Below are positions 48,011 through 64,000 of a DNA stretch of 64,000 nt, piece after piece (position 1 is the stretch's first letter; the number at the start of each line of letters is the position of its first letter). The stretch is from positions 1 to 64,000 of IMG/VR virus record IMGVR_UViG_3300032562_000004. One strand, written 5' to 3'. Both the position numbers and the translations under genes were made by a program. The notes below the pieces were generated by a model that did not search any database, was not told the DNA's origin, and saw only the letters and a program-made list of their open reading frames with translations.

Positions 48011-48020
48011 ATCTTTCCAT

Positions 48021-48067
48021 TATAAATAAAGGTGTAGGTCACGGTACTGGAATACCCACCTACTCTA
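48021..48067 (+). promoter_or_regulatory. late promoter plus conserved stem-loop upstream of GIY-YIG gene
   Basis: TATAAATA-AAGGT-GTAGGT-CAC-GGTA-ctggaa-TACC-C-ACCTAC-TCT. Confidence 0.8.
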
Positions 48068-48099
48068 TGTCATAACAGTTTAACATAAGGACACAGCTC

Positions 48100-48747
48100 A
48101 TGTCAAGTATATATTCAATCTATAAAGCCACAAATACCATTAATGGTAAAGTTTATATTGGCTTTGATTCCAAATGGCCAAAAAGGCAAATAGTCCATAA
48201 ATCCAACCATAAAAAGGTTAATTATAAATTCTATAATGCCATTCGCAAATATGGTTGGGATAATTTTGAATGGACACTAATATATCAGTCAAAAGACCGA
48301 GAACATACCTTAAAAATAATGGAACCACATTTTATTCAAGAATATGATACTTTTGTTAATGGATACAATTCAACTCTTGGAGGTGAAGGTGTTTTTGGTT
48401 TGACCAGAAAACAGTCTGATGAAGAAAAGAAACAACGAAGCATTATAATGAAAGGTAATCAATTAGGTAAAGCACTTAAAGGTAAATTGCTTAGTGAAGA
48501 AAGAAAACAATTGTTAAGAAAACCTAGAATTAATCCTGTTTCACCTTTAACTGAAGAACACAAACAAAATATATCAAAATCTAAAATTGGAAAACCAAAA
48601 CAAAAAATTAAATGTCCTCATTGTAGTAAAATGGGTGGCTTACCACAAATGAAACAATGGCACTTTGATAATTGTAAACTTATCCTTCAATCTTGTAGGA
48701 CACATCATGACATTCCGGACAAACTACTGTTCGTTTTGGGGGAATAG
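48100..48747 (+). mobile_element. free-standing GIY-YIG homing endonuclease, antisense to the replication operon
   Basis: SIYKATNTINGKVYIG; GYNSTLGGEG; NUMOD3-like repeats; C-terminal CPHC...WHFDNCK. Confidence 0.88.
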
Positions 48748-48892
48748 AAGCGAGAACCATGTTAGGATTTTGATAATAAAGTTCTACTTTACATTTATTA
48801 CATAAAACTCCAGCCATTACTTTGCCTGTTCCGAAACCATAAGTGTCAGGCCGAAAAATGGATTCATTATATTCAGTTAATGTTTTCATCAA
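48680..48892 (-). CDS. small zinc-finger protein
   Basis: CNKC...CPEC. Confidence 0.65.
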   Translation of the reverse strand: MMKTLTEYNESIFRPDTYGFGTGKVMAGVLCNKCKVELYYQNPNMVLASIPPKRTVVCPECHDVSYKIEG

Positions 48893-49169
48893 TTATTTCC
48901 TGCTCAATGTTAGATGACATAAGCTCAACGAGCAAGTCACCAATGTAATTTTTAAATTTATCATCTTTTTCCATCTTCTTTGGCTTCATGACTGGTGATT
49001 CTATCACATCATAAGCAAAAAGTAAATACATCAAACCATCTTTTTCTTCAAACTTAACTTTACCATATTTGAAGATAGTGTCCTTATAAGGACCATCTAA
49101 TAGTTTGATATGTACCGCAGTGCCATCATCTTTTGGATAAATGAAACAGTAATCAATACCTTCAATCAT
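48873..49169 (-). CDS. conserved T4-like protein (positional gp40 equivalent)
   Basis: between uvsX and gp41; YKYGKV motif; FKNYIGDLLV. Confidence 0.7.
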   Translation of the reverse strand: MIEGIDYCFIYPKDDGTAVHIKLLDGPYKDTIFKYGKVKFEEKDGLMYLLFAYDVIESPVMKPKKMEKDDKFKNYIGDLLVELMSSNIEQEIIDENIN

Positions 49170-50238
49170 CTTCTACTCCGTTAGTAGTCTCCACTTCAAA
49201 CACTTCTTCAAAATCTTCTTGCATAATACTACCTGAAGCAATTTGATAAGTATTTTGTACATATTCTTGAAAAGACTTTTGTTTTAGAATTGGTAACCAG
49301 AAATCGGAAGTATCGGTTTCTTTAATGCGATATTTCTTATCTTCTATAACGCCGTCTGAATCCACCTTAGAGTACCAACCGTTGGATGGTTTAACAACAT
49401 GGCCTGAATCAATCGCAATATCAAGTAAGCCAGACCACTTGCTAATGCCACCATCGTGACGAACTGTAACAGGAATTTTAGACTTTTCTCTAACATATCT
49501 ACTCTTTTCTACATTGATAATGAAGTTGTAACCGACAACCTCAGTACCTTCTTTTTCTTGTTGGCGGCCAATAACAAAAATGTTATCAGCTGAATAATAT
49601 GAACCTGTACCACCACCAACGATTGCTTTAGGGAACATTCCAATTTCCATGTAAGTGTGATTAACTACAATCATTGGAATATCTTTGATTGAAAGATGAG
49701 GTGTAACCATTCTGAATAATGATTTAACAGATTTAGCTCTGGTCATATCAGCAACAGTTTTACCATCTAAGGCATCATTGACTTCTTTGATAGAGGCCAA
49801 GTTACCAATTGAATCAACAACAATAATTAACCTATCACCACGTTCAACAACACTTAATTGTTGCATAATATCGGATTTTAATTGCTCAATATCAGTAAGA
49901 GGGGTGTGAAGAACACGATTAGTATCAATACCAAAGGAATCAAAATAGGATTGCGGCGTTCCAAACTCCGAATCATAGAATAGTAAGGCTGCATCAGGAT
50001 ATTTGTCCAAGTAAGATTTTGCCATCAACAAAGAGAAGGCAGTTTTAAAATGTTTAGAAGGACCTGCCCACATAGTAAGACCGGGAGTTAAACCACCATC
50101 CAAACGACCAGAAAGTGCCACATTGATAATTGGCACCGATGTTGGAATCATATCTTTATCTGTAAAGAATTTTGATTTGGATAGAATAGCTGAATCTTTA
50201 ATACTACTGTTCTTTTTAATTTTATCAAGAATACTCAT
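49162..50238 (-). CDS. uvsX: RecA-like recombinase UvsX
   Basis: AGPSKHFKT; FYDSEFG; VDSIGNL; MTRAK; NHTY; GGTGSYYSAD. Confidence 0.96.
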   Translation of the reverse strand: MSILDKIKKNSSIKDSAILSKSKFFTDKDMIPTSVPIINVALSGRLDGGLTPGLTMWAGPSKHFKTAFSLLMAKSYLDKYPDAALLFYDSEFGTPQSYFDSFGIDTNRVLHTPLTDIEQLKSDIMQQLSVVERGDRLIIVVDSIGNLASIKEVNDALDGKTVADMTRAKSVKSLFRMVTPHLSIKDIPMIVVNHTYMEIGMFPKAIVGGGTGSYYSADNIFVIGRQQEKEGTEVVGYNFIINVEKSRYVREKSKIPVTVRHDGGISKWSGLLDIAIDSGHVVKPSNGWYSKVDSDGVIEDKKYRIKETDTSDFWLPILKQKSFQEYVQNTYQIASGSIMQEDFEEVFEVETTNGVEDD

Positions 50239-51156
50239 TTATTTTCCTTTTTCACGAAACGAATATGGTGCCTCATAATCATACTTAGGCTCTAATGTTT
50301 TAGTTTTAATTCCTGCTGAAATAGGTGGCATAGTTTCACCCGAAACAGGGTCAATAATAATAGAATCTGCTGTTTTAAACTCGGTGATGTTTTCTTTTTC
50401 AACTTCAACCTTATCAGTAAATACTGGAATATCACTAGATTTTACTCCAACAATTTCATCTTTTTTAATAATCAAATCACCTGGCTGTCCAGTTTCAGGT
50501 TTTAAATTCATGGATATATTTGCTGATATCAATAATAACACAGCTAAAGGGTCAAATACAACCATAATTATCATTATTACCAATCTAACCGCTTTATCAA
50601 TACCATCTTCTGTATTACCATAAATCAATTGTGCCACATATTTTATCGGTCCAACATCGGCAGATAATTTAATATCTTCTTTCATTAATGGTAATTTTTT
50701 CTTGCTAATTTCGGTAAGGTCTTTTTGCGTATCTTGAATTTGCTTATCTAACTTACCACTTGCTGTAGATGGATCTTTGGCACGAGCCAACAAATAATCT
50801 AATCGTTCTTTGGTAATCTTTTCTTGCTGATTTATTGTTTTTAATTCAACAGTATTGGCACCAGAGTTAAGTGTGGAATCGATATGTGCTTTAGATAGAA
50901 AACCAAAAATGCCCATCGAGGTGATGAGCATGAGTAATACCACAGCAGCGGTCAAATATGATTTTATTAAAATTGGTGCTATCTTCCAATTACGATATAA
51001 CCAAGATGCTGTTACCAGTTTACTAACTTCTAATACTGAACCCATAAACACAACTGGCCAAAAAGCACCAACGAAAATGGCAGCTAATCCAATAATTGAA
51101 TAATAGGCTGCAATACCGGACAATGATATTGCGGTTAGAAATGTAATGTAAATCAT
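50239..51156 (-). CDS. conserved membrane protein
   Basis: several N-terminal TMs, coiled coil, VFDPLAV TM. Confidence 0.8.
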   Translation of the reverse strand: MIYITFLTAISLSGIAAYYSIIGLAAIFVGAFWPVVFMGSVLEVSKLVTASWLYRNWKIAPILIKSYLTAAVVLLMLITSMGIFGFLSKAHIDSTLNSGANTVELKTINQQEKITKERLDYLLARAKDPSTASGKLDKQIQDTQKDLTEISKKKLPLMKEDIKLSADVGPIKYVAQLIYGNTEDGIDKAVRLVIMIIMVVFDPLAVLLLISANISMNLKPETGQPGDLIIKKDEIVGVKSSDIPVFTDKVEVEKENITEFKTADSIIIDPVSGETMPPISAGIKTKTLEPKYDYEAPYSFREKGK

Positions 51157-53817: not shown

Positions 53818-54129
53818 TTAACCTGTAATGATTTTTGGGGTTGGAGGAACAATCAAACCAGCACCAAAGAGTTGCTCATAGTGTTTGGTGAACTCTTCCG
53901 CTGGTGTATAGGAGTATACTACATTCCGCTTAGAAATTACAAGCGTGGCACCAGAAACTTGTTCGGCATGAATAGGAAATGGTGAAAAACCAACGTTTGG
54001 TTGACCATCTTTACCACGAATTACTGTGATACCTACTGTATTTAGGAGTACAAATTCAGTTTCCGATTCAGATTCGATTTCGGCAACTACATCTTCTCCA
54101 GTAATTAATTTAAGACCTTTGATATTCAT
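53818..54129 (-). CDS. conserved T4-like hypothetical protein (Sm-like)
   Basis: LKLITGEDVVAEI motif; GGAG RBS. Confidence 0.75.
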   Translation of the reverse strand: MNIKGLKLITGEDVVAEIESESETEFVLLNTVGITVIRGKDGQPNVGFSPFPIHAEQVSGATLVISKRNVVYSYTPAEEFTKHYEQLFGAGLIVPPTPKIITG

Positions 54130-54141
54130 ATTCTCTCCTTG

Positions 54142-54212
54142 GATAAATAACTTAGTATTGATACTTATACTAATGATTAATTGATTATATAACAATAACC
54201 AATTAAAGTCAA
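54142..54212. promoter_or_regulatory. overlapping opposed promoters: plus-strand late-like GATAAATA and minus-strand sigma70
   Basis: GATAAATA at 54142-54149 (+); TTGACT-N17-TATAAT at 54184-54212 (-). Confidence 0.55.
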
Positions 54213-54219
54213 TAGTAAA

Positions 54220-54498
54220 ATGGATTTTTTTAAGATAGTTGCCGAATTAGGATTCCCTATGGCTGCCGCTTTTGCAGCTGGGTATTTCGTATTCCTAACT
54301 CTTAAATTCATTCTGGCTGGTGTTACTGGCCAAGTCAAAAGTCTGAGCGGTATTATTACCGCCTTGGACAATCGTGTTAAAACAATGAACCATGATGTTA
54401 TCAGAATTGATACCCTAATGTCGAGCGCTATGGGTGTTAAACCTGATGTTGACCGTATTGCTCGTGCTGATGGTAAAAACGATGCTCGGAGAGATTAA
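54220..54498 (+). CDS. small single-TM protein (paralog A)
   Basis: ELGFPMAAAFAAGYFV...LDNRVKTMNHDVIRID. Confidence 0.8.
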   Translation: MDFFKIVAELGFPMAAAFAAGYFVFLTLKFILAGVTGQVKSLSGIITALDNRVKTMNHDVIRIDTLMSSAMGVKPDVDRIARADGKNDARRD

Positions 54499-54782
54499 TG
54501 GATTTAGTTGAATTAGTAAACAAATATGGTTTTCCAATTGTTGCAGCTGGCGGCATGGGTTATTTTATATATTATGTTTGGACTTGGGTAACCAAAGAAA
54601 TTAAGCCAGTTTTGAGTGAAGCAAGTACAGTATTAATTGCTTTGATTGACCGTGTTAGAATGTTAGATAATGATTTGATTAGATTGAATCAGAAAATTAA
54701 CATTGTATTAATGATGCGAGAAATTAAAGAAGATGAAAAGACTAAAAAGACTAATACTGATACTGCTAACACTTACCGTTAA
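54498..54782 (+). CDS. small single-TM protein (paralog B)
   Basis: KYGFPIVAAGGMGYFI...LIDRVRMLDNDLIRLN. Confidence 0.8.
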   Translation: MDLVELVNKYGFPIVAAGGMGYFIYYVWTWVTKEIKPVLSEASTVLIALIDRVRMLDNDLIRLNQKINIVLMMREIKEDEKTKKTNTDTANTYR

Positions 54783-55197
54783 TTCAGCATATTCTGCACC
54801 ACTTAACGATTTTACATTCAAATCTCCATCATTCAATGGTAATGGTTATGGCACTTATGTTCTAACCATTCAAAATGAGGAGTATACACGAGCTCAAGCA
54901 ATTCAGCAAGCCCTATTGGCGGCACAACAACAGGCAAAGACTGATGCAGCCAACACACCACTTAATCAATTTCTGGTTAATTTAGAATCTCGTATTTACG
55001 CACAAATTTCACAAAATCTTGCTACAGCAATGTTTGGTTCAGGTTCTTCCACACAAGGTACAATGAACTTCCAAGGCAACACAATCAGTTATGTTAATCA
55101 AGGAAGTAACATTCAATTAACTGTTACCGATAATCTTGGTAACCAAACAGTCATTAATGTACCAATTGGGCAATTTAATATTACAGGACAACCATGA
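54733..55197 (+). CDS. csgF: curli assembly protein CsgF-like
   Basis: signal peptide then FTFKSPSFNG; NQFLVNLESRIYAQISQNL. Confidence 0.75.
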   Translation: MKRLKRLILILLTLTVNSAYSAPLNDFTFKSPSFNGNGYGTYVLTIQNEEYTRAQAIQQALLAAQQQAKTDAANTPLNQFLVNLESRIYAQISQNLATAMFGSGSSTQGTMNFQGNTISYVNQGSNIQLTVTDNLGNQTVINVPIGQFNITGQP

Positions 55198-56063
55198 AAA
55201 AAGTATTGTTAATTGTTTTGGTTGCAATGTTGTCTGGTTGTGCTATGTTACAAAAAAGTGGACAATTAACGGGAATTGAACATGAACCAAAAGTAGCGGA
55301 AAACAAACTTCAAAAAGAGTTTGATAGAGTTCCACCACCTAAAGGTGCTCATATTACTGTTGCCGTGTATTCATTTCAAGATAAAACCGGCCAACGTAAA
55401 GCAGTATCAACATATGCTAGTTTTAGTACCGCAGTTACGCAAGGCGCTGAACCATTTTTAATTAAAGCATTACAAGATGTTGGTAGTGGTACATGGTTTG
55501 ATGTTGTTGAACGTGTTAATGTGGAAAATTTAATTAAAGAAAGAACCATCATTAAGCAAATGCGTGATGCTTATGAAGGTCCTAAAGCACAACAATTAGC
55601 ACCATTACAGTTCGCTGGTATCATCATGGAAGGTGGTATCATTGGTTATGATTCTAGTACTGAATCTGGTGGACTTGCATATCGTTGGTTAGGCATTGGA
55701 CCACAGACACAATATAGTAAAGATATAGTTACAATCAGTTTACGAGCAGTTAGTGTGAGCTCAGGTAAGGTATTGGCAACGGTAACTGTTACAAAAACAG
55801 TTTACTCAACTGCCGATAGTTTTGCTATGTTAAAGTTCTTTAATGACGGAACTCAGGCCTTTGAGGCTGAATCAGGTTTAACAATCAATGAACCTGGAAC
55901 ATTAGCGGTGAAAGCAACCGTGGAAGCCGCAGTAGTTGAATTAATTAAAGAGGGACAAAGACGAGGTATTTGGGAATTTAGATATCCAATGCCTGAGGAC
56001 AAACCTTGGTGGAAATTTGGAAATGTTCAAACAACACAAAAGGAAGAAAAAAATGAAAAGTAA
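55194..56063 (+). CDS. csgG: curli secretion channel CsgG-like lipoprotein
   Basis: LSGC lipobox; VAVYSFQDKTGQRK; TAVTQGA; VVER...LIKERTII; EGGIIGYD. Confidence 0.92.
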   Translation: MKKVLLIVLVAMLSGCAMLQKSGQLTGIEHEPKVAENKLQKEFDRVPPPKGAHITVAVYSFQDKTGQRKAVSTYASFSTAVTQGAEPFLIKALQDVGSGTWFDVVERVNVENLIKERTIIKQMRDAYEGPKAQQLAPLQFAGIIMEGGIIGYDSSTESGGLAYRWLGIGPQTQYSKDIVTISLRAVSVSSGKVLATVTVTKTVYSTADSFAMLKFFNDGTQAFEAESGLTINEPGTLAVKATVEAAVVELIKEGQRRGIWEFRYPMPEDKPWWKFGNVQTTQKEEKNEK

Positions 56064-56883
56064 ATTAACAAGCTTTGTTATGGGTTTGTTGGTTGCGTTC
56101 AACGTAGCAGCTGCAGACAATAGTATCTATATTGACCAATCCGGAAATAGTTCTACGGTTAGCATTACACAAGATGGTGCAGGTAATATAGTTCAAGGTA
56201 TTCAAGGCACCGGAACAAGTAGCACAACACCAGCAACAATCTATGGTGATAGTAATCAAGTTACTATCAACCAAGTGGGCACAGGAGATACTGTTAGTTT
56301 TGGTATCAAAACATCTGTGGCTAATGGTGTGAGTGGTGGAAACAATTTTAGTTATTCGATTAATGGTAACAACTCTAACGCTGTTATCGATTCAAATAAC
56401 GATGGTCAAGGAGTATCAGCAAGTAATACTGTTACAGTCAATCAAACCGGCAACAATTCCAATGCTAATATTAATGTGTTGGGTTCACAAAATACTGTTA
56501 CCGCTACAACAACAGGTGGTGCTAGCAATAGTGTGGTTTCAACCATAGATGGAAATAGCAACTCACAAACTATTAATGTGTCTGGTGGTGGTTCTAACTC
56601 TATTACTGTTGAACAAGGTATTGGGGGTTCAGCTCTAACCGGTAATGCAACAACGCAAAATAATAGTAATGGTTCTGTAAATTTAACTGTTGTTGGTGCA
56701 AGTAATACTGTGGCAATTGGTCAAACCAGTTCAGGTTCTTATCAAAATACCACAGTTGTTTCTTTAACTGGTTCTAGTGATAATGTAAACATATTACAAA
56801 ATGCATCTGCAGGTAACACTACTGTAAACTTGCAATCTGTTGGTAGTAGTAATACATTTACCATACACAGCAACGCACACTAA
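56053..56883 (+). CDS. curlin-like repeat protein
   Basis: signal peptide; N/S/T/G/Q-rich; repeated I-x-Q-x-G-x-x-N units. Confidence 0.75.
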   Translation: MKSKLTSFVMGLLVAFNVAAADNSIYIDQSGNSSTVSITQDGAGNIVQGIQGTGTSSTTPATIYGDSNQVTINQVGTGDTVSFGIKTSVANGVSGGNNFSYSINGNNSNAVIDSNNDGQGVSASNTVTVNQTGNNSNANINVLGSQNTVTATTTGGASNSVVSTIDGNSNSQTINVSGGGSNSITVEQGIGGSALTGNATTQNNSNGSVNLTVVGASNTVAIGQTSSGSYQNTTVVSLTGSSDNVNILQNASAGNTTVNLQSVGSSNTFTIHSNAH

Positions 56884-58001
56884 TGAAACATGTTTTATTA
56901 TGTGTTCTATTGATATCGTTTAATTGTTATGCTGGAATTGGGACAGTCACCGAACAGGTGAATGCTCCCGGTTCTATTGTTCGTTCTAACAAATCAATGC
57001 CAGCTGCCAAAGGTACTGGTGTTGAAATGAACGATACCGTCAATACAACCAAAGGTAAAGTTGAAATAACTTTTGCCGATGATACTAAAGTTGAGGTTAA
57101 CGAAAACTCAAAATTGGTTATTGACGATTTCGTTTATGATGCTAAATCTTCTAAGAATAGTAAATTGGCCATGAAGTTTGCTTCAGGTACAGTTCGTTAT
57201 GCCTCTGGTGCAATCGCACATAACAATCCCAATGCAGTAGCACTCAATACACCATCAACAACTATTGCTGTTCGTGGTACCGATTTCACAGCAACCGTGG
57301 ATGAAGGAGGTGCTTCTACTGTTATTCTTTTACCTTCTTGTCCAAAAGTATGGGTTGATATTGAAAGAGATTGTAAAACAGGAGTAATTGATGTTATTAA
57401 TGATGCTGGTATGGTAACACTCAACAAACCATTTCAAGGCACTAAAGTTGAAAGTCGTAATGTGGCACCAATGAAACCTGTTGTTCTTTCTTTGACTGCT
57501 GATACAATTAACAATCTTCTTATTGTTGCTCCACCAAAAGAATTAAATAAAGATAAACTTGAAAATAAAAGTACTATAGTTATTAATTCTGCCAACATGT
57601 TAGCAGTTAATTTTTTAAAACAAGATTTTTTAAAGAATGAATTGGCAGACCAAACTCCTTATGGTGATAATCCATTAACCAAACCATTACTTGAACAATA
57701 CTTCTTGGCCAACATTTTTGATATTTTAGCGCAGCAGTTACAAGAGGAACAAATGGGTTTATTGGCCAATTTATTAACCCCACAAAATACGTTGTTACCG
57801 GATTATAAAAAAGAAACTGGTGTAGTAACTTCTATTGGCGTATCTACTGTTGGTTTATGTCGTAATGACGGAAGTAATATGCAATGTGTTACTGTACCAA
57901 AGTCAGAAAATGCCACTATATATCAACAACAAGGTTCGGTTGATATTCGTAACAGAGTAAATAGTGGCGGTAACACAATCATAACATTAAAGCAAAATTA
58001 A
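56883..58001 (+). CDS. FecR-domain secreted/periplasmic protein
   Basis: signal peptide; DTVNT...ITFADDTKVEVNENSKLVIDDF; TPSTTIAVRGTDF. Confidence 0.85.
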   Translation: MKHVLLCVLLISFNCYAGIGTVTEQVNAPGSIVRSNKSMPAAKGTGVEMNDTVNTTKGKVEITFADDTKVEVNENSKLVIDDFVYDAKSSKNSKLAMKFASGTVRYASGAIAHNNPNAVALNTPSTTIAVRGTDFTATVDEGGASTVILLPSCPKVWVDIERDCKTGVIDVINDAGMVTLNKPFQGTKVESRNVAPMKPVVLSLTADTINNLLIVAPPKELNKDKLENKSTIVINSANMLAVNFLKQDFLKNELADQTPYGDNPLTKPLLEQYFLANIFDILAQQLQEEQMGLLANLLTPQNTLLPDYKKETGVVTSIGVSTVGLCRNDGSNMQCVTVPKSENATIYQQQGSVDIRNRVNSGGNTIITLKQN

Positions 58002-58588
58002 TGAAATTTTTAATTATCCTTTTTTTAATATCAGGCCTTGGACAATGTTCATACATCAAAGCCGCAGATAATACCATTGCAATAGACCAAGTTGGTAGTA
58101 ATAATCAATACACAATTTCACAAGATTATACAGGAAATTCTGTTGATATTTCGATTGGAAAATCATCAGCAAGCGATAATAATGTTATCGGAATTACACA
58201 AGGTGGATTTGGTCAACAAACATCAAGTATTAAAATACCTGGTGGCATTAATAATACCGTTTCAATTACTCAAAACGGAGTAGGTAATATGGTTGCAACA
58301 GTAGATAATATGAATGGTTCTGCAAACAATATTACTATTAATCAGGGTGGGGCAAGTAACAATACAATGAACATTATTGGTGGTACAGGAACAACAAACA
58401 ATGCAAATACGATTAATACAACTCAATTCGGAAATGCAGGTGCAGATAAATCCTTCACACTAAATATGAATGGTACAAATGGTGCCAATGTTACAGTACA
58501 ACAAACGAATCCAACTCAATCAAATACCGGTTCAATGAGTATTCAATGTTACACCAATTGTGGTAGTTATAGTTACATAAGAAACTAA
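58001..58588 (+). CDS. second curlin-like repeat protein
   Basis: IDQVGSNN, ITQGGFG, ITQNGVGN, INQGGASNN repeats. Confidence 0.7.
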   Translation: MKFLIILFLISGLGQCSYIKAADNTIAIDQVGSNNQYTISQDYTGNSVDISIGKSSASDNNVIGITQGGFGQQTSSIKIPGGINNTVSITQNGVGNMVATVDNMNGSANNITINQGGASNNTMNIIGGTGTTNNANTINTTQFGNAGADKSFTLNMNGTNGANVTVQQTNPTQSNTGSMSIQCYTNCGSYSYIRN

Positions 58589-58589
58589 T

Positions 58590-60602
58590 ATGAAAATACT
58601 GAAGAAATTATTACTCTCTCCATGGACAGCAATATTAACACTCATATTATTGGTATGTATTCGTGTATCAGATCCTTCATTTGTTGAGTCGGTAAGACTT
58701 CGTTATTTTGATACTGTTATATCTTCAAAATCTATTACCACATCACAAATAAGTGTTGTGAATATTGATGATTTTACAATAGAAAAAAAAGGTCAATTTC
58801 CTTTTCCTAGAGGACAATATGCAAAAATTATTCAAGATTTGTATCAACGTAATGCTGGTCTTGTTGTGTTTAATGTTTTCATGCCTGATAGCGATAGGTT
58901 TTTTCAGGATAGTATATTGGCTAACACACTCAGGAAATATCCAGTAGTTTTACCACAAATTGGTTCTACCGATAAACCCAATAAAATAATTCCTTTTAGA
59001 CCAGGTGTTTCAGTAATCGGAGAAGGCAGTGCAGGCGTTATATATAATTCTATCCAACCTAATGTGAAAGAATTAAATGAGACGGCTGCTGGCATTGGCA
59101 TTGTTAATACTCTCCCCGAAATTGATGGCGTCACCAGACGAGTGCCTATGGTGGTACAATCCGGTAACGGCTTGCTTTACCCTGCAATCTCTCTTGAATC
59201 CCTTCGAGTTGCCTCTGGAGACCCAAGTTTTCAAATCAAACTCGGAGAAACAGGAATACAAGCCCTCAGAATTCCTAAATTTGGAAAAATCACAACCGAC
59301 CCAATTGGAAGGATATGGGTCGATTGGTCCAGTAAACCCACAGAATATTCCTTCTCCAACTTACCAAAGGATTTTGGAGGTTCCATCGTCATCGTTGGAC
59401 TCACAGCAAAAGGCCTCAACAATCCGGTTGCAACTTCAGTCGGTGCCGTCTATCCTCATTACCTACAAGCAGCAGTTCTAGACACCTTAATCTCAGGTAC
59501 AAACATCTCCAGACCAGACTGGTCAGACGGAGCAGAGTTATTATACACAATTGCACTTTGTATAATAGCAATTTTCTTTACAAGGTATACACATGGTTAC
59601 ATCGCAATCATCATTATGGGAATTGCATCCTATGTACTTGGCCATGAATCATTCAATCGATATAATTACTTACTTGATGTTACTTTCCCACTTCTCACCA
59701 TTACTCTTGTTTTCGCACATGGCTACGTTATCAAATTCCTGTCGGAATTAAAACAAAAACTCCAAATTAAAAAACAATTTGGAACATATTTAAGTCCCGC
59801 TTTAGTAGAAAAACTCCAAAAAAATCCAGAATTGTTGGTTCTTGGTGGAGAATCCAGAGAACTTTCTATTATGTTTACTGATGTTCGTGGTTTCACAACA
59901 ATTTCAGAACATTATGGTAAAGATGTGCAAGGTTTAACTAAGATTATGAATCGTTATATGACTGCAATGACCGCAAAGATTATTGAAAATAACGGCACTC
60001 TGGATAAGTACATTGGAGATGCTCAGATGGCATTTTGGAACGCACCTCTAGATGAACCTAATCATGCTAAGATGGCTGTGAAAACTGCAATACAAATGAT
60101 GGAGAATTTAGATGAATTCAATAATGAAATTACTAAAGAGGGCATCCCAGCTTTTGGCATGGGTCTTGGCATTAATACTGGTACCGTTGTTGTTGGCAAT
60201 ATGGGTAGTAGCCAGCGTTTCGATTATACTTGTCTTGGAGATTCTGTTAATCTTGCATCCCGGCTTGAAGGTCAAAGTAAACCGTATGGTGTCAGAATGG
60301 TCCTCGGACCTGATACAGCTCTTCAAGTAAAAGATGAATATCCTGTTATTGAGTTAGATTGTATTGCTGTTAAAGGTAAAAAAGAAGGTGTGAAAATATT
60401 TACACTAGGCAAATCTAACTGGAAACATGAAGATTACCTTGATGCTTATTACACAGGTGATTGGGATAAAGCGATAGGTCATTGTAAGACCTTGATTGAA
60501 GAAGGTGGAGAGTTAAAACAATACTACGAAAATATGTTGGAAAGACTACAAGAAGGAGTTCCATCCGATTGGGATGGAACCTATAGAGCAACTTCTAAGT
60601 AA
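58590..60602 (+). CDS. CHASE2-domain class III adenylate cyclase
   Basis: IDD..I...GQFPFPR; DGVTRRVP; GAVYPH; TMs; MFTDVRGFT; DKYIGD; GDSVNLASRLEG. Confidence 0.93.
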   Translation: MKILKKLLLSPWTAILTLILLVCIRVSDPSFVESVRLRYFDTVISSKSITTSQISVVNIDDFTIEKKGQFPFPRGQYAKIIQDLYQRNAGLVVFNVFMPDSDRFFQDSILANTLRKYPVVLPQIGSTDKPNKIIPFRPGVSVIGEGSAGVIYNSIQPNVKELNETAAGIGIVNTLPEIDGVTRRVPMVVQSGNGLLYPAISLESLRVASGDPSFQIKLGETGIQALRIPKFGKITTDPIGRIWVDWSSKPTEYSFSNLPKDFGGSIVIVGLTAKGLNNPVATSVGAVYPHYLQAAVLDTLISGTNISRPDWSDGAELLYTIALCIIAIFFTRYTHGYIAIIIMGIASYVLGHESFNRYNYLLDVTFPLLTITLVFAHGYVIKFLSELKQKLQIKKQFGTYLSPALVEKLQKNPELLVLGGESRELSIMFTDVRGFTTISEHYGKDVQGLTKIMNRYMTAMTAKIIENNGTLDKYIGDAQMAFWNAPLDEPNHAKMAVKTAIQMMENLDEFNNEITKEGIPAFGMGLGINTGTVVVGNMGSSQRFDYTCLGDSVNLASRLEGQSKPYGVRMVLGPDTALQVKDEYPVIELDCIAVKGKKEGVKIFTLGKSNWKHEDYLDAYYTGDWDKAIGHCKTLIEEGGELKQYYENMLERLQEGVPSDWDGTYRATSK

Positions 60603-60803
60603 TTAAGCGTAAGTATCAGCTTCTACGGCACCAGCAGAATGAATTATTTCACCATCAAGGTCATAAACCTTAACAGTATGTGAATTTAAACTGTTGGCAA
60701 AACCAATAGCATCTAATGAAGATGTAAAGATATTTTCTAGTGTTAATAGTTCGCCATTATACCAATGTTGGCTAACTACTTTGTGGTGGTGATGCTTGCT
60801 CAT
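60603..60803 (-). CDS. hypothetical protein
   Basis: 66-aa ORF with GGAG RBS. Confidence 0.65.
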   Translation of the reverse strand: MSKHHHHKVVSQHWYNGELLTLENIFTSSLDAIGFANSLNSHTVKVYDLDGEIIHSAGAVEADTYA

Positions 60804-60811
60804 TTTTTCTC

Positions 60812-61831
60812 CTAAAGAAAGTATTTTGTCCAGATTTTTCTGGTATTATTTGTATATTTTTTCAAATTTCGTTGATTCAAAAAAACACTTAATCTAGGGT
60901 ATTTATAAGCCCTCAAAAGTGCCTCACAAATATCTTCACTATCTGTACAATCCGCATTGATAAATGAGGTTGACCATGGAATTTCAGTACTTCCAATCAA
61001 AGGAACACCTTGAGAAGTTAGGTCAGCACCCACAATGTTAAAAGTTTCTGAGAAATTACATTGCATACCAATGTCCATTTGAGAACACAACTGTAAAAAT
61101 TCTTCTCTAGGAGTCCATTGATGATTGATTAATGTATGGCCTCTTCCATAGATTTGCTGAAATAATCCTTTGAGATTATTGATATTGGCATTACCATTCA
61201 TTTCAATACGACCAGCATTTACATGGAATCGTAATTTCTTTCCAACTCTTTCAGCAAATTCAATAGCAGCAAATGCTTGCACTAAATGATTTTTTAATGG
61301 ACGAATTGCACCAAAACAAGATACATCAACCCATTCTTTATCTTTGTTGAATTGTTTTGTTTTGTATTCTTGTGGATAAAAATTAGGTAAATAAATTACT
61401 TTATCTGTACCCAAATAGAGTTGAATTTCTCTCAACATTCTAGGTGCATTACAAGCAATCTTAACATTCTTAAATGTTCTATAATCGCCTAGCCAATCCA
61501 TGGCCATTCCTTCTCCTGCCATAAAAGGCATTTCAGAATGTAAACGAACAATCCATTGAACACTTGGATGTAACTTTTGAAGAATGGAGAATTTAGTAGG
61601 AACAACCCATAGTGCCTCAATGATTACATGAGTGGGTTTGTGTTTAGATACAAGTCTATCGATACAATTGTTATCAACAGCAACTTCAAGAACAGAATTA
61701 AATCCTGCTTCAACCAACATATCATTCATAAATTTGGCAGAGTTATATAAACCTGTACTCAAACCAATGTGTGAATGTACTTTAGCGTTGTAATCTTCTC
61801 TGCGTTTTAGTATGAATAATATTTTGGACAT
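60812..61831 (-). CDS. GT-B (GT4-like) glycosyltransferase
   Basis: FGAIRPLKN; SETFNIVGAD; GVPLI; late-like CATAAATA upstream (~61866-61873). Confidence 0.65.
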   Translation of the reverse strand: MSKILFILKRREDYNAKVHSHIGLSTGLYNSAKFMNDMLVEAGFNSVLEVAVDNNCIDRLVSKHKPTHVIIEALWVVPTKFSILQKLHPSVQWIVRLHSEMPFMAGEGMAMDWLGDYRTFKNVKIACNAPRMLREIQLYLGTDKVIYLPNFYPQEYKTKQFNKDKEWVDVSCFGAIRPLKNHLVQAFAAIEFAERVGKKLRFHVNAGRIEMNGNANINNLKGLFQQIYGRGHTLINHQWTPREEFLQLCSQMDIGMQCNFSETFNIVGADLTSQGVPLIGSTEIPWSTSFINADCTDSEDICEALLRAYKYPRLSVFLNQRNLKKYTNNTRKIWTKYFL

Positions 61832-61895
61832 AACGAACCATTATAAGTTTTTTGGATTAAAATTTTATTTATGCCATCATATTATTTCGGTTTTG

Positions 61896-62018
61896 TTACC
61901 GACCACGACCTGCTTTACGCATTACAGTATTTTTGGGAACAAATTTTTGAGTTTGTTTTGGTGCTGGCTTTTGTGTTTGTGGCTTAATTGGTGTTGCAGG
62001 CTTTTTAGTTTCACTCAT
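61896..62018 (-). CDS. small basic protein (40 aa)
   Basis: GGAG RBS; MSETKKPATPIKPQTQKPAPK...RKAGRGR. Confidence 0.55.
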   Translation of the reverse strand: MSETKKPATPIKPQTQKPAPKQTQKFVPKNTVMRKAGRGR

Positions 62019-62031
62019 AATATCTCCTTGT

Positions 62032-62105
62032 TGGTTGCGGATCCTGGAGTTGCACCAAGAACTAAAGATTATGAGTCTTTTGTGATTCTATTTCACCAAT
62101 CCGCT
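62032..62105 (-). tRNA. tRNA with CAT anticodon, initiator-like acceptor stem
   Basis: cloverleaf; AAAGA-CTCATAA-TCTTT; 1:72 mismatch; ends CCGCAACCA. Confidence 0.8.
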
Positions 62106-62161
62106 GTTATATTTTACTAAATGGATTATGAAGTTAATCATAATACTATAAAGGACTTTAA

Positions 62162-62524
62162 ATGTTAAATTGTGTCATATGTTCAAATAAACTTAAAGGT
62201 AAACAAACAAAATTTTGTAGTTTGCCTTGTAAAAATACTTCTACAAACTTGAAAAATCAATCCTATACAAACCAAAGAGAAAGAGGATTAGATGTTAAAA
62301 CCAAATTAATTAAATTAAAAGGATCTTGTTGTTCAGTATGTGGTTACAATAAAAATTATGCTGGTCTTTGTTTCCATCACCTAAAAGATAAAAATTTTCA
62401 AATAGATATGAGAAGATGTTCCAATACAAAATGGGAAATTTTGGTCGAAGAAGTTGAAAAGTGTATGCTACTTTGTCACAACTGCCACATGGAAATTCAC
62501 TATCCTGTATATTCCATTATATAG
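62162..62524 (+). mobile_element. HNH homing endonuclease, antisense within the tRNA cluster
   Basis: CSVCGY...LCFHHL...CMLLCHNCHMEIH; N-terminal CxxC zinc finger. Confidence 0.85.
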
Positions 62525-62527
62525 ACA

Positions 62528-62722
62528 TTATTGAGAATACTGTTTCGTGTTTAAGATAATTCAACCGACCCTTTACAGGATTATTTCGGTATTATAGGTC
62601 TCTCCTGTGTTCGTCTTGCTGCGTCAGCATACAGCGTTCTCAGATACCTGAGGATTACTACCAGGATGATGTCCTTCCCTAACAGTTGGGATTGCTTACT
62701 CTTTTGCCCACATTCTCAATAA
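62528..62722 (-). ncRNA. ~195-nt structured ncRNA of unassigned family
   Basis: 11-bp closing stem TTATTGAGAAT/ATTCTCAATAA, five internal hairpins and a possible pseudoknot; starts immediately after the tRNA-Gly CCA. Confidence 0.7.
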
Positions 62723-62796
62723 TGGAGCGGGATATTGGAATTGAACCAATGACGAAAGGTTGGAAACCTTTAGTTTTACCACTAAACTAATCCCGC
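62723..62796 (-). tRNA. tRNA-Gly (TCC)
   Basis: canonical cloverleaf; AAAGG-TTTCCAA-CCTTT; encoded CCA. Confidence 0.92.
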
Positions 62797-62802
62797 AAAA
62801 AC

Positions 62803-62869
62803 TGGAGCGGTGGTCTGCTTTGCTCAGATAATCTAAGAGGGTATCTCAAATCGTGCTATCACACACCGC
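62803..62869 (-). ncRNA. tRNA-like RNA with Gly-type acceptor and non-canonical loops
   Basis: GCGGTG/CACCGC-T-CCA; T-loop AGCAAAG; short D arm; 67 nt. Confidence 0.6.
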
Positions 62870-62926
62870 ATATTCAATACTATAACATTACTTATACACA
62901 AAGTCAATAACTTTATGTGGTAAATT

Positions 62927-63011
62927 TGGTGCATCAGGAAAGATTCGAACTTTCGTAGCCAGAGGCGATTGATTTACAGTCAATTGGTTTTAACCACTCA
63001 CCCACCGATGC
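62927..63011 (-). tRNA. tRNA-Tyr (GTA)
   Basis: ATTGA-CTGTAAA-TCAAT; long variable arm; CCA. Confidence 0.92.
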
Positions 63012-63016
63012 ATTTT

Positions 63017-63092
63017 TGGCTCCCCGAGCTGGGCTCGAACCAGCGACCTACGGATTAACAGTCCGGCGCTCTACCAACTGAGCTATCAGGGA
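63017..63092 (-). tRNA. tRNA-Asn (GTT)
   Basis: canonical 76-nt cloverleaf; CCA. Confidence 0.95.
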
Positions 63093-63150
63093 ATAAAACA
63101 TTTATTATACTACACAAAAGAATTCCTGTCTAGTAACTTTTTGGTATACT

Positions 63151-63225
63151 TGGCATCCCGGTACGGATTCGAACCGCATCTTTTGGTTTTGGAGACCAAT
63201 GTGCTACCGTTAACACTACCGAGAA
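63151..63225 (-). tRNA. tRNA-Trp (CCA)
   Basis: TTGGT-CTCCAAA-ACCAA; G73; apparent U1:U72 mismatch; CCA end. Confidence 0.88.
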
Positions 63226-63228
63226 CTC

Positions 63229-63260
63229 GAAAAAAAACCCTAGAGATTAGTCTAGGGTTT
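63229..63260 (-). terminator. rho-independent terminator after hss
   Basis: AAACCCTAGA/TCTAGGGTTT stem with a T-tract. Confidence 0.7.
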
Positions 63261-63286
63261 TATTATAACAGACTTAATTTATTTTA

Positions 63287-64000
63287 TCAAGTCCAAACCC
63301 TAAAGTTTTCAAATTTACATGGATTATTTTTACTTAATTCACGGTAAAATAATGAATTGGTATCTTGTGATGGTGTCCAATTAGACATTACCGACACCAA
63401 AGGTTCCCAATACATATCACCAATTGCCAAAATTTCTTCAAATGGTAACATTTCAGGTTCAATATATCCTTCTCTTGGGTGATTAATCATCCAAACAATA
63501 GCACCTAACATGGAGCCTGCAACTTGTATTGATGTAGCATTTTCACCTTCAACAAGTTTACGAGCACCATGAATATCTAATTGTGATCCGTGCCAAAAGC
63601 AGAATCCATCACCAATCAATAGCACACCTAACTCATCCATACCCGAAACAATTTCATCTTTTAAAATACGATGGTCTCTTTGTAAGTCTAATTCGTTACC
63701 ACGCATCTCATGTAAAGAAGCAAGAGCTGCATCACATGGTTGATAAACATAATAAACGGATGGTCTAAATGATTTGTCTTTTGTTTCAAAATATTGGCTT
63801 AGTGTAACAGACTCAGAGTGCTGAATACAATAACCATTATATTGTCCACCATCAGGTACCCATGAACGCATTAGTGTTGTACAACCAGGTTGCATTAAGT
63901 ATGCTACATTACCCTGTGAACGACCACCTTCTGGATGTTTATCTTCGTGTGTACCCCAACCCATCTCTGTAGGTGCACGACCTTCTGCCCAAAAACCTTC
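63287..64000 (-). CDS. hss: homospermidine synthase, 3' part (5' end outside window)
   Basis: YCIQHSESVTL; RPSVYYVYQPCD; DELGVLL; NATSIQVAG; GYIEPE. Confidence 0.85.
   Translation of the reverse strand, partial: EGFWAEGRAPTEMGWGTHEDKHPEGGRSQGNVAYLMQPGCTTLMRSWVPDGGQYNGYCIQHSESVTLSQYFETKDKSFRPSVYYVYQPCDAALASLHEMRGNELDLQRDHRILKDEIVSGMDELGVLLIGDGFCFWHGSQLDIHGARKLVEGENATSIQVAGSMLGAIVWMINHPREGYIEPEMLPFEEILAIGDMYWEPLVSVMSNWTPSQDTNSLFYRELSKNNPCKFENFRVWT

What the first reader, a model, noticed from the sequence alone, without database searches (positions are those of the whole stretch)
54220..60602. Phage-encoded curli-secretion plus FecR plus CHASE2 adenylate-cyclase cassette: candidate trans-envelope signalling system
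Seen: eight consecutive, mostly abutting or overlapping plus-strand genes in an otherwise minus-strand region. They encode two small TM paralogs, CsgF-like, CsgG-like lipoprotein, a curlin-like repeat protein, a FecR-domain exported protein, a second curlin-like protein and a membrane CHASE2 class III cyclase, with a late-like GATAAATA upstream. Known: CsgG/CsgF form the outer-membrane curli channel, and csgF/csgG have been reported in some aquatic T4-like phages. CHASE2 cyclases are periplasm-sensing inner-membrane enzymes, and FecR domains relay signals across the periplasm. Inference: this is a complete surface-to-cytoplasm circuit (exported beta-solenoid, pore, FecR relay, cAMP) that might sense cell contact or superinfecting phage and tune lysis timing, aggregation or the CRP regulon. 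Alternatively it exports curlin-like virion fibres. No CsgE-like gene was recognised.
Basis: partly seen in the sequence, partly recalled or inferred. Interest (0 to 1): 0.9.

Follow-up and report, generated by a model that had tools for sequence, protein, structure and literature searches.

The report
Phage curli-export cassette wired to cyclase
A large T4-like aquatic phage carries an eight-gene envelope cassette, a curli-type export pore with fibre subunits, a FecR-type periplasmic protein and a membrane sensor that makes cAMP; this cassette family was already published for marine phages in 2022, its function is still unknown, and comparative evidence here favours a device that reports the state of a surface filament to the cytoplasm.

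Summary
Eight abutting plus-strand genes (54220-60602) encode two small membrane paralogs, CsgF, lipoprotein CsgG, two curlin-repeat proteins, an exported FecR-domain protein and a CHASE2 class III adenylate cyclase with all catalytic residues.

It is not new. Wittmers et al. 2022 (PMC9599517) described the same module in pelagiphages, including FecR and the cyclase, with metatranscriptome expression. This window is a divergent copy (37-44% identity to cultured phages) in a 236-kb phage.

What this analysis adds:
- The sensor domain is CHASE2.
- The published 'histidine kinase' label for the small proteins is untenable.
- A T4-late-type NATAAATA motif is conserved upstream.
- The cassette occurs in at least 589 viral contigs.
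- The CsgF-to-cyclase core also sits in Caulobacterales chromosomes.
- The nearest bacterial CHASE2 cyclases sit beside other surface-filament exporters, often with FecR domains fused to the export substrate or the outer-membrane barrel.

This favours secretion- or fibre-coupled trans-envelope cAMP signalling. That function, the cAMP receptor and any link to lysis remain untested.

The parts
54142..54149 (+). GATAAATA, a T4-late-promoter-like motif 71 nt upstream of the first gene
   Evidence: Sequence read. ATAAATA is depleted in the window (14 found against 37.9 +/- 6.4 expected), and 9 of the 14 sites lie within 104 nt upstream of a same-strand ORF. NATAAATA lies within 100 nt upstream of the tmA homolog in 14 of 17 related loci, including Melnitz and HTVC008M. 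No plus-strand sigma-70-like site was found upstream.
54220..54498 (+). tmA: 92-aa bitopic membrane protein (N-terminal TM, then a helical charged tail ending in a conserved ...RIARADGKNDARRD motif)
   Evidence: PHROG 18771, 7e-35. One hydrophobic segment at residues 6-24. No Pfam family. Family alignment A4. Among 50,697 cultured phage records it occurs only in the 6 that carry the cassette.
54498..54782 (+). tmB: 94-aa paralog of tmA
   Evidence: 30% identity to tmA, E 2e-13. PHROG 18771, 1e-36. No kinase family matches any of 24 members, and only 5/24 give weak YvrJ-like hits. The family has 864 representative clusters, and all of the top 150 are 68-209 aa with no fusions.
54733..55197 (+). 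CsgF-like exported protein (T8SS outer-membrane accessory)
   Evidence: Pfam CsgF 1.1e-15 over the full profile. Signal peptide present. The mature N-terminus carries an F-x-F-K-S-P-S-F-N-G-N-G segment, comparable (from memory) to the CsgF segment that inserts into CsgG.
55194..56063 (+). CsgG-like outer-membrane lipoprotein channel
   Evidence: Pfam CsgG 1.3e-45. End-to-end alignment with E. coli CsgG structures (3x2r, 6l7a, 4uv3), E 1e-42, including the lipobox Cys and the F-S-T-A-V loop.
56053..56883 (+). curlin-repeat protein 1 (276 aa from the ATG; signal peptide; Asn/Ser/Thr/Gly-rich)
   Evidence: Curlin_rpt 0.0013-0.002, below the cutoff for this copy, but 13/19 family members match (best 6.5e-9). 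The AlphaFold model is an all-beta solenoid (pLDDT 79, pTM 0.77). No PDB match reaches E<0.001.
56883..58001 (+). exported FecR-domain protein: signal peptide, FecR-type beta domain (about residues 20-200), low-confidence helical linker, small C-terminal beta domain
   Evidence: Pfam FecR 4.8e-11. In the model, residues 20-200 have pLDDT of about 90. Foldseek matches 4m0n (anti-sigma factor) at 1.9e-5 and the PupR cell-surface-signalling domain 6ovk at 1.2e-4. There is no TM helix and no anti-sigma N-domain.
58001..58588 (+). curlin-repeat protein 2 (195 aa, signal peptide)
   Evidence: Curlin_rpt 0.0016. It shares the post-signal-peptide segment AADN-x-I-x-IDQ-x-G with protein 1 (42% identity over 48 aa).
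58590..60602 (+). membrane CHASE2 class IIIb adenylate cyclase (TM, periplasmic CHASE2, TMs, cyclase, conserved C-terminal tail)
   Evidence: CHASE2 5e-37 and Guanylate_cyc 6e-21. Best solved relatives are bacterial adenylate cyclases, with CyaB 3r5g at 5e-43 using the profile. D431, D477, K473, T547, N554 and R558 are all present. D431, D477 and R558 are identical in all 71 cassette-linked cyclases, and K473 in 70 of 71, the other being an X.

Best explanation
The cassette is one late-expressed envelope module made of two joined halves. The first half is a type VIII (curli-type) export apparatus. CsgG forms the outer-membrane channel, CsgF is its outer accessory, and one or two Sec-exported curlin-repeat beta-solenoid proteins are the substrates. 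The second half is a cAMP generator: an inner-membrane adenylate cyclase held under the control of its periplasmic CHASE2 domain. The exported FecR-domain protein is the coupler between them. It has the fold that, in FecR/PupR regulators, docks onto an outer-membrane protein. The proposed mechanism is that the state of the pore or fibre (substrate passing, fibre assembled, or fibre perturbed from outside) is relayed through the FecR-domain protein to CHASE2. This changes cyclase activity and therefore cAMP in the infected cell. The two small inner-membrane paralogs tmA and tmB are a phage-specific addition that probably links the module to a phage process. Shown here: gene identities, topology, an intact catalytic site, tight co-inheritance, the conserved late-type motif, a cellular counterpart, and recurrent wiring of related cyclases to exporters. 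Inferred: the physical contacts, the direction of signalling, the signal itself, and what reads the cAMP.
For: Components and topology. The cyclase is catalytically intact and adenine-specific, and is conserved across 71 copies. The FecR fold matches periplasmic cell-surface-signalling domains. Co-inheritance is tight. Every cyclase-anchored viral locus with enough flank carries the whole set. Among CsgG-anchored loci, 46/46 have CsgF, curlin and FecR, 44/46 have the cyclase and 36/46 have tmB. The core CsgF-to-cyclase block is a discrete unit in Caulobacterales chromosomes with cellular flanks. The cassette cyclases form one clade (SH-aLRT 100) next to alphaproteobacterial CHASE2 cyclases. 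Of those 18 loci, 10 have at least one T1SS part adjacent and 7 have two or more. Others lie beside a TPS exoprotein or an OM barrel plus FecR. FecR domains are fused to RTX repeats (L052) or to an OM beta-barrel (L062). Experimental precedent: S. meliloti CHASE2 cyclases raise cAMP on sensing an extracellular protein via the OM barrel NsrA (PMC13001267). Deleting CHASE2 makes CyaD1 constitutive, and a FecR-domain gene lies beside cyaD1 (PMC5498481). Late expression is suggested by the conserved NATAAATA motif, and transcripts were reported in ocean metatranscriptomes (PMC9599517).
Against: No interaction was tested or modelled, so FecR-CHASE2 and FecR-CsgG contacts are inferred from gene order and analogy. 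In S. meliloti the FecR-domain neighbour was not required for signal perception (PMC5498481). No cAMP receptor was found in or near the cassette. Divergence of FecR tracks CsgF/CsgG/curlin (r 0.82-0.90) much more than CHASE2 (r 0.52). This fits an outer-membrane-side partner but gives little support for a specific FecR-CHASE2 contact, and it is confounded by physical linkage. Some podophage versions lack the cyclase (PMC9599517), so the export half can apparently stand alone. No clumping or fibres were seen in Melnitz infections (PMC9004378).
Confidence: 0.5

Rival explanations
1. The fibres are the purpose. The phage makes infected cells display curli-like amyloid for aggregation ('sibling capture'), adhesion or a shield against superinfection. 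FecR and the cyclase act only as regulators or quality control of fibre production (inside-out), as proposed by Zaragoza-Solas 2020 and Wittmers 2022.
For: A complete minimal T8SS with substrates is present. The curlin genes are the fastest-evolving parts, as expected for surface-exposed proteins (mean identity 34%). Podophage versions often lack the cyclase (PMC9599517). In E. coli, cAMP-CRP feeds into curli regulation (as cited in PMC9599517).
Against: No CsgD or other transcription factor lies in the cassette for cAMP to act on. A late-promoter operon needs no such control. The cyclase is retained in 44/46 myophage-type loci with a strictly conserved active site. No clumping was seen with Melnitz (PMC9004378). 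The same cyclase clade is coupled to non-amyloid exporters in bacteria.
Confidence: 0.25
2. A superinfection-exclusion or abortive-infection-like device. An envelope sensor detects an incoming competitor phage and the cyclic nucleotide triggers a membrane effector (tmA/tmB in phages, PycTM in one bacterium), by analogy with Pycsar.
For: In L037 a PycTM effector gene directly follows the cyclase (Pfam 9e-25; PADLOC PycTM 1e-17). The cyclase domain matches PADLOC PycC models (1e-25). tmA/tmB are small membrane proteins that always travel with the phage cassette.
Against: PycTM is absent from L056 (cyclase 93% identical to L037's), L039, L040 and all phage loci. PycC hits are expected for any class III cyclase. 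The purine-specifying Lys argues for cAMP, not cCMP/cUMP. tmA/tmB match no PADLOC model.
Confidence: 0.1
3. CsgG-CsgF is used only as a pore: a gated secretin or pinholin-like lysis timer (Buchholz 2022), or an import channel for nutrients or cofactors.
For: No CsgE gate is present. The late-type promoter fits a lysis-stage role. Both hypotheses appear in PMC9004378 and PMC7029224.
Against: CsgG is an outer-membrane lipoprotein channel, so it cannot depolarise the inner membrane as a pinholin does. This idea leaves the two curlin genes, FecR and the cyclase unexplained, although they are co-inherited in 44-46 of 46 loci.
Confidence: 0.07
4. The curlin-like proteins are virion fibres exported or assembled with help of the cassette.
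For: Late-type promoter. In Melnitz and HTVC008M the cassette adjoins tail and baseplate genes.
Against: All the proteins carry Sec signal peptides or a lipobox and would end up in the periplasm, outer membrane or outside, away from cytoplasmic virion assembly. The same core cassette exists in bacterial chromosomes without phage structural genes. In the window it adjoins replication genes.
Confidence: 0.02

Closest known systems
Pelagiphage T8SS ('curli') module of Wittmers et al. 2022 (PMC9599517); first noted as csgFG in pelagimyophages (PMC7029224) and in Methylophilales phage Melnitz (PMC9004378)
   Same: Same gene set and order: two small proteins, CsgF, CsgG, curlin, FecR, curlin and cyclase. 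The order is directly syntenic with Melnitz and HTVC008M. All lack CsgE, CsgC and CsgD.
   Different: It is a divergent copy: cyclase 37-40%, CsgG 41-44% and FecR 35-41% identity to the cultured phages. It sits in a 236-kb T4-like phage whose DNA polymerase is only about 50% identical to any cultured phage, and next to the replication module rather than tail genes. The published labels 'histidine kinase' and 'iron regulator' are not supported here.
E. coli curli system CsgBAC-CsgDEFG (type VIII secretion)
   Same: It has a CsgG lipoprotein channel (E 1e-42 to solved structures), CsgF, and Sec-exported Gln/Asn/Gly-rich repeat substrates with Curlin_rpt homology at family level.
   Different: It has no CsgE gate or adaptor, no CsgC/CsgH chaperone and no CsgD regulator. 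Its substrates are longer and irregular. It adds a FecR-domain protein, a CHASE2 cyclase and tmA/tmB. Amyloid formation is untested.
S. meliloti CyaD1/CyaD2/CyaK CHASE2 adenylate cyclases with the OM barrel NsrA and FecR-domain SMc02177 (PMC13001267, PMC5498481)
   Same: The cyclase architecture is the same (CHASE2 plus class III). A FecR-domain exported protein is encoded next to the cyclase. An outer-membrane protein is needed to pass an extracellular protein signal to cAMP synthesis, and CHASE2 acts as an inhibitory input.
   Different: The outer-membrane partner there is a beta-barrel (NsrA), not a T8SS. The output regulator Clr is known there and unknown here. SMc02177 was not required for perception.
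FecA-FecR-FecI / PupB-PupR cell-surface signalling
   Same: The periplasmic FecR-type fold (Foldseek 6ovk 1.2e-4, 4m0n 1.9e-5) docks onto an outer-membrane protein and relays information inward.
   Different: Here the protein is fully exported, with a signal peptide and no TM or cytoplasmic anti-sigma domain. There is no TonB-dependent transducer and no ECF sigma factor. The output is a cyclase, and nothing links it to iron.
Burkholderia 'BiofilmReg' operon: FecR/LysM protein plus CHASE2 histidine kinase (PMC5192318)
   Same: An exported FecR-domain protein is encoded directly beside a CHASE2 membrane sensor, and the operon is linked to a biofilm phenotype.
   Different: Its output is a histidine kinase and response regulator, not a cyclase, and no secretion pore is in the operon.

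Membership tests
Phage T8SS-FecR-cyclase module (Wittmers 2022) | Syntenic set of small TM protein(s), CsgF, CsgG, curlin repeat, FecR, (curlin repeat), adenylate cyclase in a phage genome | tested here: met
   Same order as Melnitz and HTVC008M. All eight genes are present.
Type VIII secretion (curli) system | CsgG outer-membrane lipoprotein channel | tested here: met
   Pfam 1.3e-45. Full-length alignment to solved CsgG with the lipobox Cys.
Type VIII secretion (curli) system | CsgF accessory protein | tested here: met
   Pfam CsgF 1.1e-15, profile positions 4-132 of 132. phmmer against PDB CsgF chains found nothing.
Type VIII secretion (curli) system | Secreted curlin-repeat subunits (CsgA/CsgB type) | tested here: inconclusive
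   The window copies score below Pfam's cutoff (18.5-19.1 against 20.7 bits). At family level 13/19 match (best 6.5e-9). The model is a beta-solenoid but has no significant PDB match.
Type VIII secretion (curli) system | CsgE periplasmic adaptor/gate and CsgC/CsgH anti-amyloid chaperone | tested here: not met
   No such Pfam match in any of the eight proteins at E<=0.1. This is typical of alphaproteobacterial-type systems according to PMC9599517.
Type VIII secretion (curli) system | Substrates form extracellular amyloid fibres | not testable with these tools
   Needs Congo red/ThT or electron microscopy.
CHASE2-type class III adenylate cyclase | N-terminal TM, periplasmic CHASE2, further TMs, and a cyclase domain with two metal Asp, Lys plus Thr/Asp adenine pair, and Asn and Arg for the transition state | tested here: met
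   D431, D477, K473, T547, N554 and R558.
FecR/PupR anti-sigma cell-surface signalling | Periplasmic FecR-type domain | tested here: met
   Pfam 4.8e-11. Foldseek 4m0n and 6ovk.
FecR/PupR anti-sigma cell-surface signalling | Single-pass inner-membrane protein with a cytoplasmic anti-sigma domain, a partner ECF sigma and a TonB-dependent transducer | tested here: not met
   The only hydrophobic segment is the cleavable N-terminal signal peptide. No other domain was found. No sigma factor or TonB receptor lies in the cassette.
Histidine kinase (label given to tmA/tmB in PMC9599517) | DHp (HisKA) and catalytic HATPase domains | tested here: not met
   The proteins are 92-94 aa. There is no kinase family among 24 members even at E<=1. 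The 864 related clusters show top hits of 68-209 aa without fusions.
Pycsar anti-phage system | Pyrimidine cyclase adjacent to a PycTM/PycTIR effector | tested here: not met
   The window has no effector. The cyclase keeps the purine-specifying Lys. PycTM is adjacent in only one bacterial locus, L037.
T4-type late transcription unit | TATAAATA-like -10 element upstream, recognised by gp55/gp33 | tested here: inconclusive
   GATAAATA at 54142-54149. The motif is depleted genome-wide and conserved upstream in 14/17 relatives. Transcription itself was not measured.

The most novel reading that the evidence does not exclude
CHASE2 cyclases with FecR-domain partners may form a general, undescribed class of filament-coupled trans-envelope sensors. 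In this reading the FecR-domain protein is itself a stalled or tethered substrate of the adjoining exporter. It carries RTX repeats in T1SS-linked systems, is fused to the barrel in others, and perhaps ends in a curlin-like repeat in the T8SS-linked phage cassette. It would therefore physically connect an extracellular filament through the outer-membrane pore to the CHASE2 domain. Phages would have captured this device and added tmA/tmB, so that an infected cell can sense contact, neighbours or superinfecting phage and adjust late events such as lysis timing through cAMP.
Probability: 0.15. Interest if true: 0.85.

Novelty: new member of a known kind. Interest (0 to 1): 0.45.

Why it matters
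Phage-borne curli-type secretion genes are abundant in aquatic viromes. PMC9599517 estimates about 0.1% of assembled viral proteins in the GOV2 ocean viromes, and at least 589 IMG/VR contigs carry them here. They give infected cells an envelope function their hosts lack, yet nobody knows what it does. Three points make the problem experimentally tractable in laboratory E. coli and in a cellular host. The cyclase is a CHASE2 sensor. The core cassette also exists in Caulobacterales chromosomes. The nearest bacterial cyclases are wired to other filament exporters. Together these point to a possible general principle: second-messenger signalling coupled to surface-filament export. For this window specifically, the finding is another, divergent member of a published module.

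Tried and rejected
- **Near-identical DNA in cultured phages:** none found.
- **'Histidine kinase' identity of tmA/tmB:** rejected. Only weak YvrJ-like similarity was seen (5/24 members, best E 0.004).
- **PycTM as a core component:** rejected, because it is present only in L037.
- **Foldseek confirmation that the repeat protein is CsgA-like:** no PDB hit with E<0.001, only generic beta-helices.
- **Curlin-like repeat at the C-terminus of the FecR protein:** hhalign gave probability 51%, E 1.5e-4. The shuffle control gave p of about 0.02. Pfam Curlin_rpt detects 0/20. It is kept only as a lead.
- **Direction of transfer between Caulobacterales and phages:** unresolved. The bacterial copies group with phage locus L163 at an unresolved base of the clade, and the nearest relatives of the bacterial FecR protein are phage copies.
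- **CsgF against PDB by sequence:** no hit.
- **Literature linking CHASE2 to secretion systems:** none found in the library searched.
- **cAMP receptor:** the ten ORFs flanking the cassette (45525-51156, 53818-54129 and 60603-63964) were scanned and show no cNMP-binding or CRP family. The rest of the 236-kb genome could not be read.
- **Habitat:** the sample habitat of the source contig could not be established with these tools.

Full report
**1. Observation**

The region 54220-60602 holds eight plus-strand ORFs that abut or overlap. The surrounding stretch is otherwise almost wholly minus-strand.

- CsgF, 1e-15
- CsgG, 1e-45
- FecR, 5e-11
- CHASE2, 5e-37, followed by Guanylate_cyc, 6e-21

The two repeat proteins hit Curlin_rpt just below threshold. 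Across 19 homologs, however, 13 match, the best at 6.5e-9. The first two proteins are paralogs, with 30% identity and E 2e-13.

Simple sequence inspection shows:
- signal peptides on CsgF, both curlins and the FecR protein
- a lipobox in CsgG
- a TM / periplasmic CHASE2 / TM / cytoplasmic cyclase layout

CsgG aligns end to end with solved E. coli CsgG, E 1e-42. No CsgE, CsgC or CsgH was found.

**2. Source of the window**

The window comes from IMG/VR contig UViG_3300032562_000004, which is 235,812 bp. The neighbours of the cassette are T4-type replication genes:
- a gp43-like DNA polymerase, about 50% identical to cyanomyophage polymerases
- UvsX and a gp41-like helicase

**3. Prior knowledge**

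- csgF and csgG in pelagimyophages were reported in 2020, with the 'sibling capture' idea (PMC7029224).
- The Melnitz paper proposed a lysis-timing pore. It never mentions FecR or the cyclase (PMC9004378).
- Wittmers et al. 2022 described the whole module (HK, CsgF, CsgG, CsgA/B, FecR, CsgA/B, AC) in podo- and myo-pelagiphages. They reported co-occurrence across ocean viromes, transcripts in metatranscriptomes, and an alphaproteobacterial affinity for each gene (PMC9599517). They did not name CHASE2. They stated that FecR, AC and HK are not within bacterial T8SS operons.
- No experimental follow-up turned up in the library.

The cassette family is therefore known. The window holds a divergent member, with its cyclase 37-40% identical to those of Melnitz and HTVC008M and the same gene order.

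**4. Co-occurrence**

Anchoring on the cyclase gave 32 viral loci. Every locus with enough upstream sequence carries the set, and those that lack it are cut by contig ends.

Anchoring on CsgG gave at least 589 viral contigs. Of the best 80, 46 had enough flank to assess:

| Gene | Loci with it (of 46) |
|---|---|
| CsgF | 46 |
| curlin | 46 |
| FecR | 46 |
| cyclase | 44 |
| tmB | 36 |
| tmA | 32 |

The tm pair sits either upstream on the same strand or downstream on the opposite strand. It therefore follows the cassette independently of operon structure. Among 50,697 cultured phage records, tmA occurs only in the six that have the cassette.

Host loci range from GC 0.32 to 0.53, and contigs reach 364 kb. 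Context look-ups showed a 337-kb jumbo phage and a T4-like contig with a compact one-curlin version. This spread of GC content and genome size suggests the module is not confined to pelagiphages, although no hosts were assigned here.

**5. The parts in detail**

*Cyclase.* The window copy has the full class IIIb set: D431 and D477 for metal binding, K473 and T547 for adenine, and N554 and R558 for the transition state. It aligns motif for motif with P. aeruginosa CyaB and OaPAC. Across 71 cassette-linked cyclases, the metal Asp residues and the Arg are invariant, and the Lys is present in 70 of 71, the remaining one being an X. Positions 547 and 554 switch together, T/N in 37 copies and D/S in 30. 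The predicted product is cAMP.

*FecR protein.* The AlphaFold model is confident for residues 20-200. Foldseek matches a Parabacteroides anti-sigma factor (4m0n, 1.9e-5) and the PupR cell-surface-signalling domain (6ovk, 1.2e-4). The protein is fully exported and has no anti-sigma domain. It therefore shares a fold with FecR regulators, not their system, and nothing ties it to iron. A further hit, to 5ix9 ('cell surface anchoring domain'; 62 columns, TM 0.71, E 0.009), is noted but was not interpreted.

*Curlin 1.* The model is an all-beta solenoid with pTM 0.77. It has no significant solved relative.

*tmA and tmB.* No kinase family matches. An exhaustive profile search found 864 clusters of small stand-alone proteins. 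The 'histidine kinase' label should be dropped.

**6. Promoter**

GATAAATA lies 71 nt before tmA. ATAAATA is depleted in the window, with 14 sites found against 38 expected, and most sites precede same-strand ORFs. NATAAATA is present upstream of tmA in 14 of 17 relatives. No plus-strand sigma-70-like site lies upstream of tmA. Late transcription as a single unit is inferred, not shown.

**7. A cellular counterpart**

A profile scan of one genome per species returned many MAG contigs that are evidently phage, because they carry tmA/tmB. Four loci are different: L039 and L040 (Henriciella; one contig of 397 kb) and L037 and L056 (Caulobacteraceae).
- They carry CsgF, CsgG, curlin(s), FecR and the CHASE2 cyclase, without tmA/tmB.
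- Their flanks are ordinary cellular genes: TonB-dependent receptors, glycosyltransferases, FAA hydrolase and peptidase S9.
- L037 and L056 share only the cassette, at 71-96% identity, and have different flanks.
- Cassette GC is 0.51-0.53, against 0.37 in the phage.

The core is thus a discrete unit in Caulobacterales. This refines the published statement that FecR and AC lie outside bacterial T8SS operons.

The direction of transfer is unresolved. The bacterial copies sit at the unresolved base of the cassette clade together with phage locus L163. The closest relatives of the bacterial FecR protein are phage copies.

**8. The wider pattern**

The cassette cyclases form one clade (SH-aLRT 100) beside 18 ordinary alphaproteobacterial CHASE2 cyclases. 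Of those 18 loci, 10 have type I secretion parts directly adjacent, and 7 have two or more. The parts are a HlyB-like ABC exporter, HlyD and a TolC-like OEP, with RTX-cadherin proteins alongside.

Other arrangements:
- L071: FecR, then a 1,531-aa TPS exoprotein, then the CHASE2 cyclase
- L077: an OM beta-barrel/TPR protein, then FecR, then the cyclase
- L052: FecR fused to RTX repeats in a single protein
- L062: FecR fused to TPR repeats and an MtrB/PioB-type barrel

Published cases add to this. A FecR-domain gene lies beside cyaD1 in S. meliloti, where CHASE2 cyclases sense an extracellular protein through the OM barrel NsrA, and where deleting CHASE2 gives constitutive cAMP (PMC5498481, PMC13001267). 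A FecR/LysM gene lies beside a CHASE2 kinase in Burkholderia (PMC5192318).

The recurrent theme is a CHASE2 sensor, a FecR-domain protein, and an outer-membrane export channel with a filamentous substrate. I found no paper that states this.

**9. Mechanism**

The best reading is a curli-type export apparatus coupled through the FecR-domain protein to a CHASE2 adenylate cyclase, so that the state of the pore or fibre sets cAMP in the infected cell late in infection.

Divergence patterns show three co-varying blocks: tmA/tmB; CsgF/CsgG/curlin/FecR; and the cyclase. This places FecR with the outer-membrane side. Gene adjacency confounds the result, so it is only suggestive.

A curlin-like repeat at the C-terminus of the FecR protein would make it a tethered substrate. 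The evidence is weak: hhalign probability 51%, shuffle control p of about 0.02, and no Pfam hit in 20 members.

Rival readings are scored in their own section: fibres as the end purpose, a defence-like device, a bare pore, and virion fibres.

**10. Verdict**

The window is a new member of a published module, and its function remains open. The comparative results in sections 7 and 8 are the useful additions.

Noticed in passing
window 45525-46634 (-): A 369-aa phage ORF in the replication module matches the Druantia defence protein family DruA (Pfam 1.2e-9, 38 bits, above the cutoff of 27).
   Followed up: no
window 62032-63224 (-): A cluster of five tRNA genes (Met, Gly, Tyr, Asn, Trp) lies just downstream of the cassette region. 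A Cys-rich 120-aa ORF with no Pfam match (62162-62524, +) sits between them.
   Followed up: no
whole window: The heptamer ATAAATA is strongly under-represented (14 sites against 37.9 +/- 6.4 in shuffles), and most occurrences precede same-strand ORFs. This is as expected if the motif is reserved for T4-type late promoters.
   Followed up: partly
L037:11497-12090 (+): In one Caulobacteraceae MAG, a PycTM (Pycsar effector) protein is encoded directly after the cassette's CHASE2 cyclase, with no other cyclase nearby. It is absent from the closely related L056 and from all other loci.
   Followed up: partly
cyclase positions 547 and 554 (window 60228-60230 and 60249-60251): Across 71 cassette-linked cyclases, two active-site positions switch together: Thr/Asn in 37 (including the window), Asp/Ser in 30 (including Melnitz) and Ser/Asn in 4. 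This may reflect two catalytic or specificity variants.
   Followed up: partly
cyclase residues about 605-670 (window 60402-60599): A conserved C-terminal tail follows the cyclase domain. R652, P658, W661, G663, A667 and K670 are conserved in at least 90% of the ten aligned phage cyclases. It has no domain assignment.
   Followed up: no
L165/L166 (JGI 3300071517/3300071516, contigs of about 337 kb): A jumbo phage carries a compact seven-gene version of the cassette with one curlin gene. A 157-aa OMP_b-brl protein follows the cyclase, and an ART-PolyVal/Polbeta protein is encoded nearby.
   Followed up: no
L009:5427-6186 and L042:4843-6666: CsgG in L009 and the cyclase in L042 are each split into two ORFs. 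These may be pseudogenes or assembly errors in otherwise intact cassettes.
   Followed up: no
L021/L030:2134-2412 and L031:13511-13942, L035:15307-15738: Some phages carry a third tmA-like copy, one of them with a long C-terminal extension (143 aa), so the small-protein family expands within cassettes.
   Followed up: no
window 63287-63964 (-): An ORF matches the saccharopine dehydrogenase C-terminal domain (2.4e-7). This is an unusual metabolic gene for a phage. It runs toward the window end.
   Followed up: no
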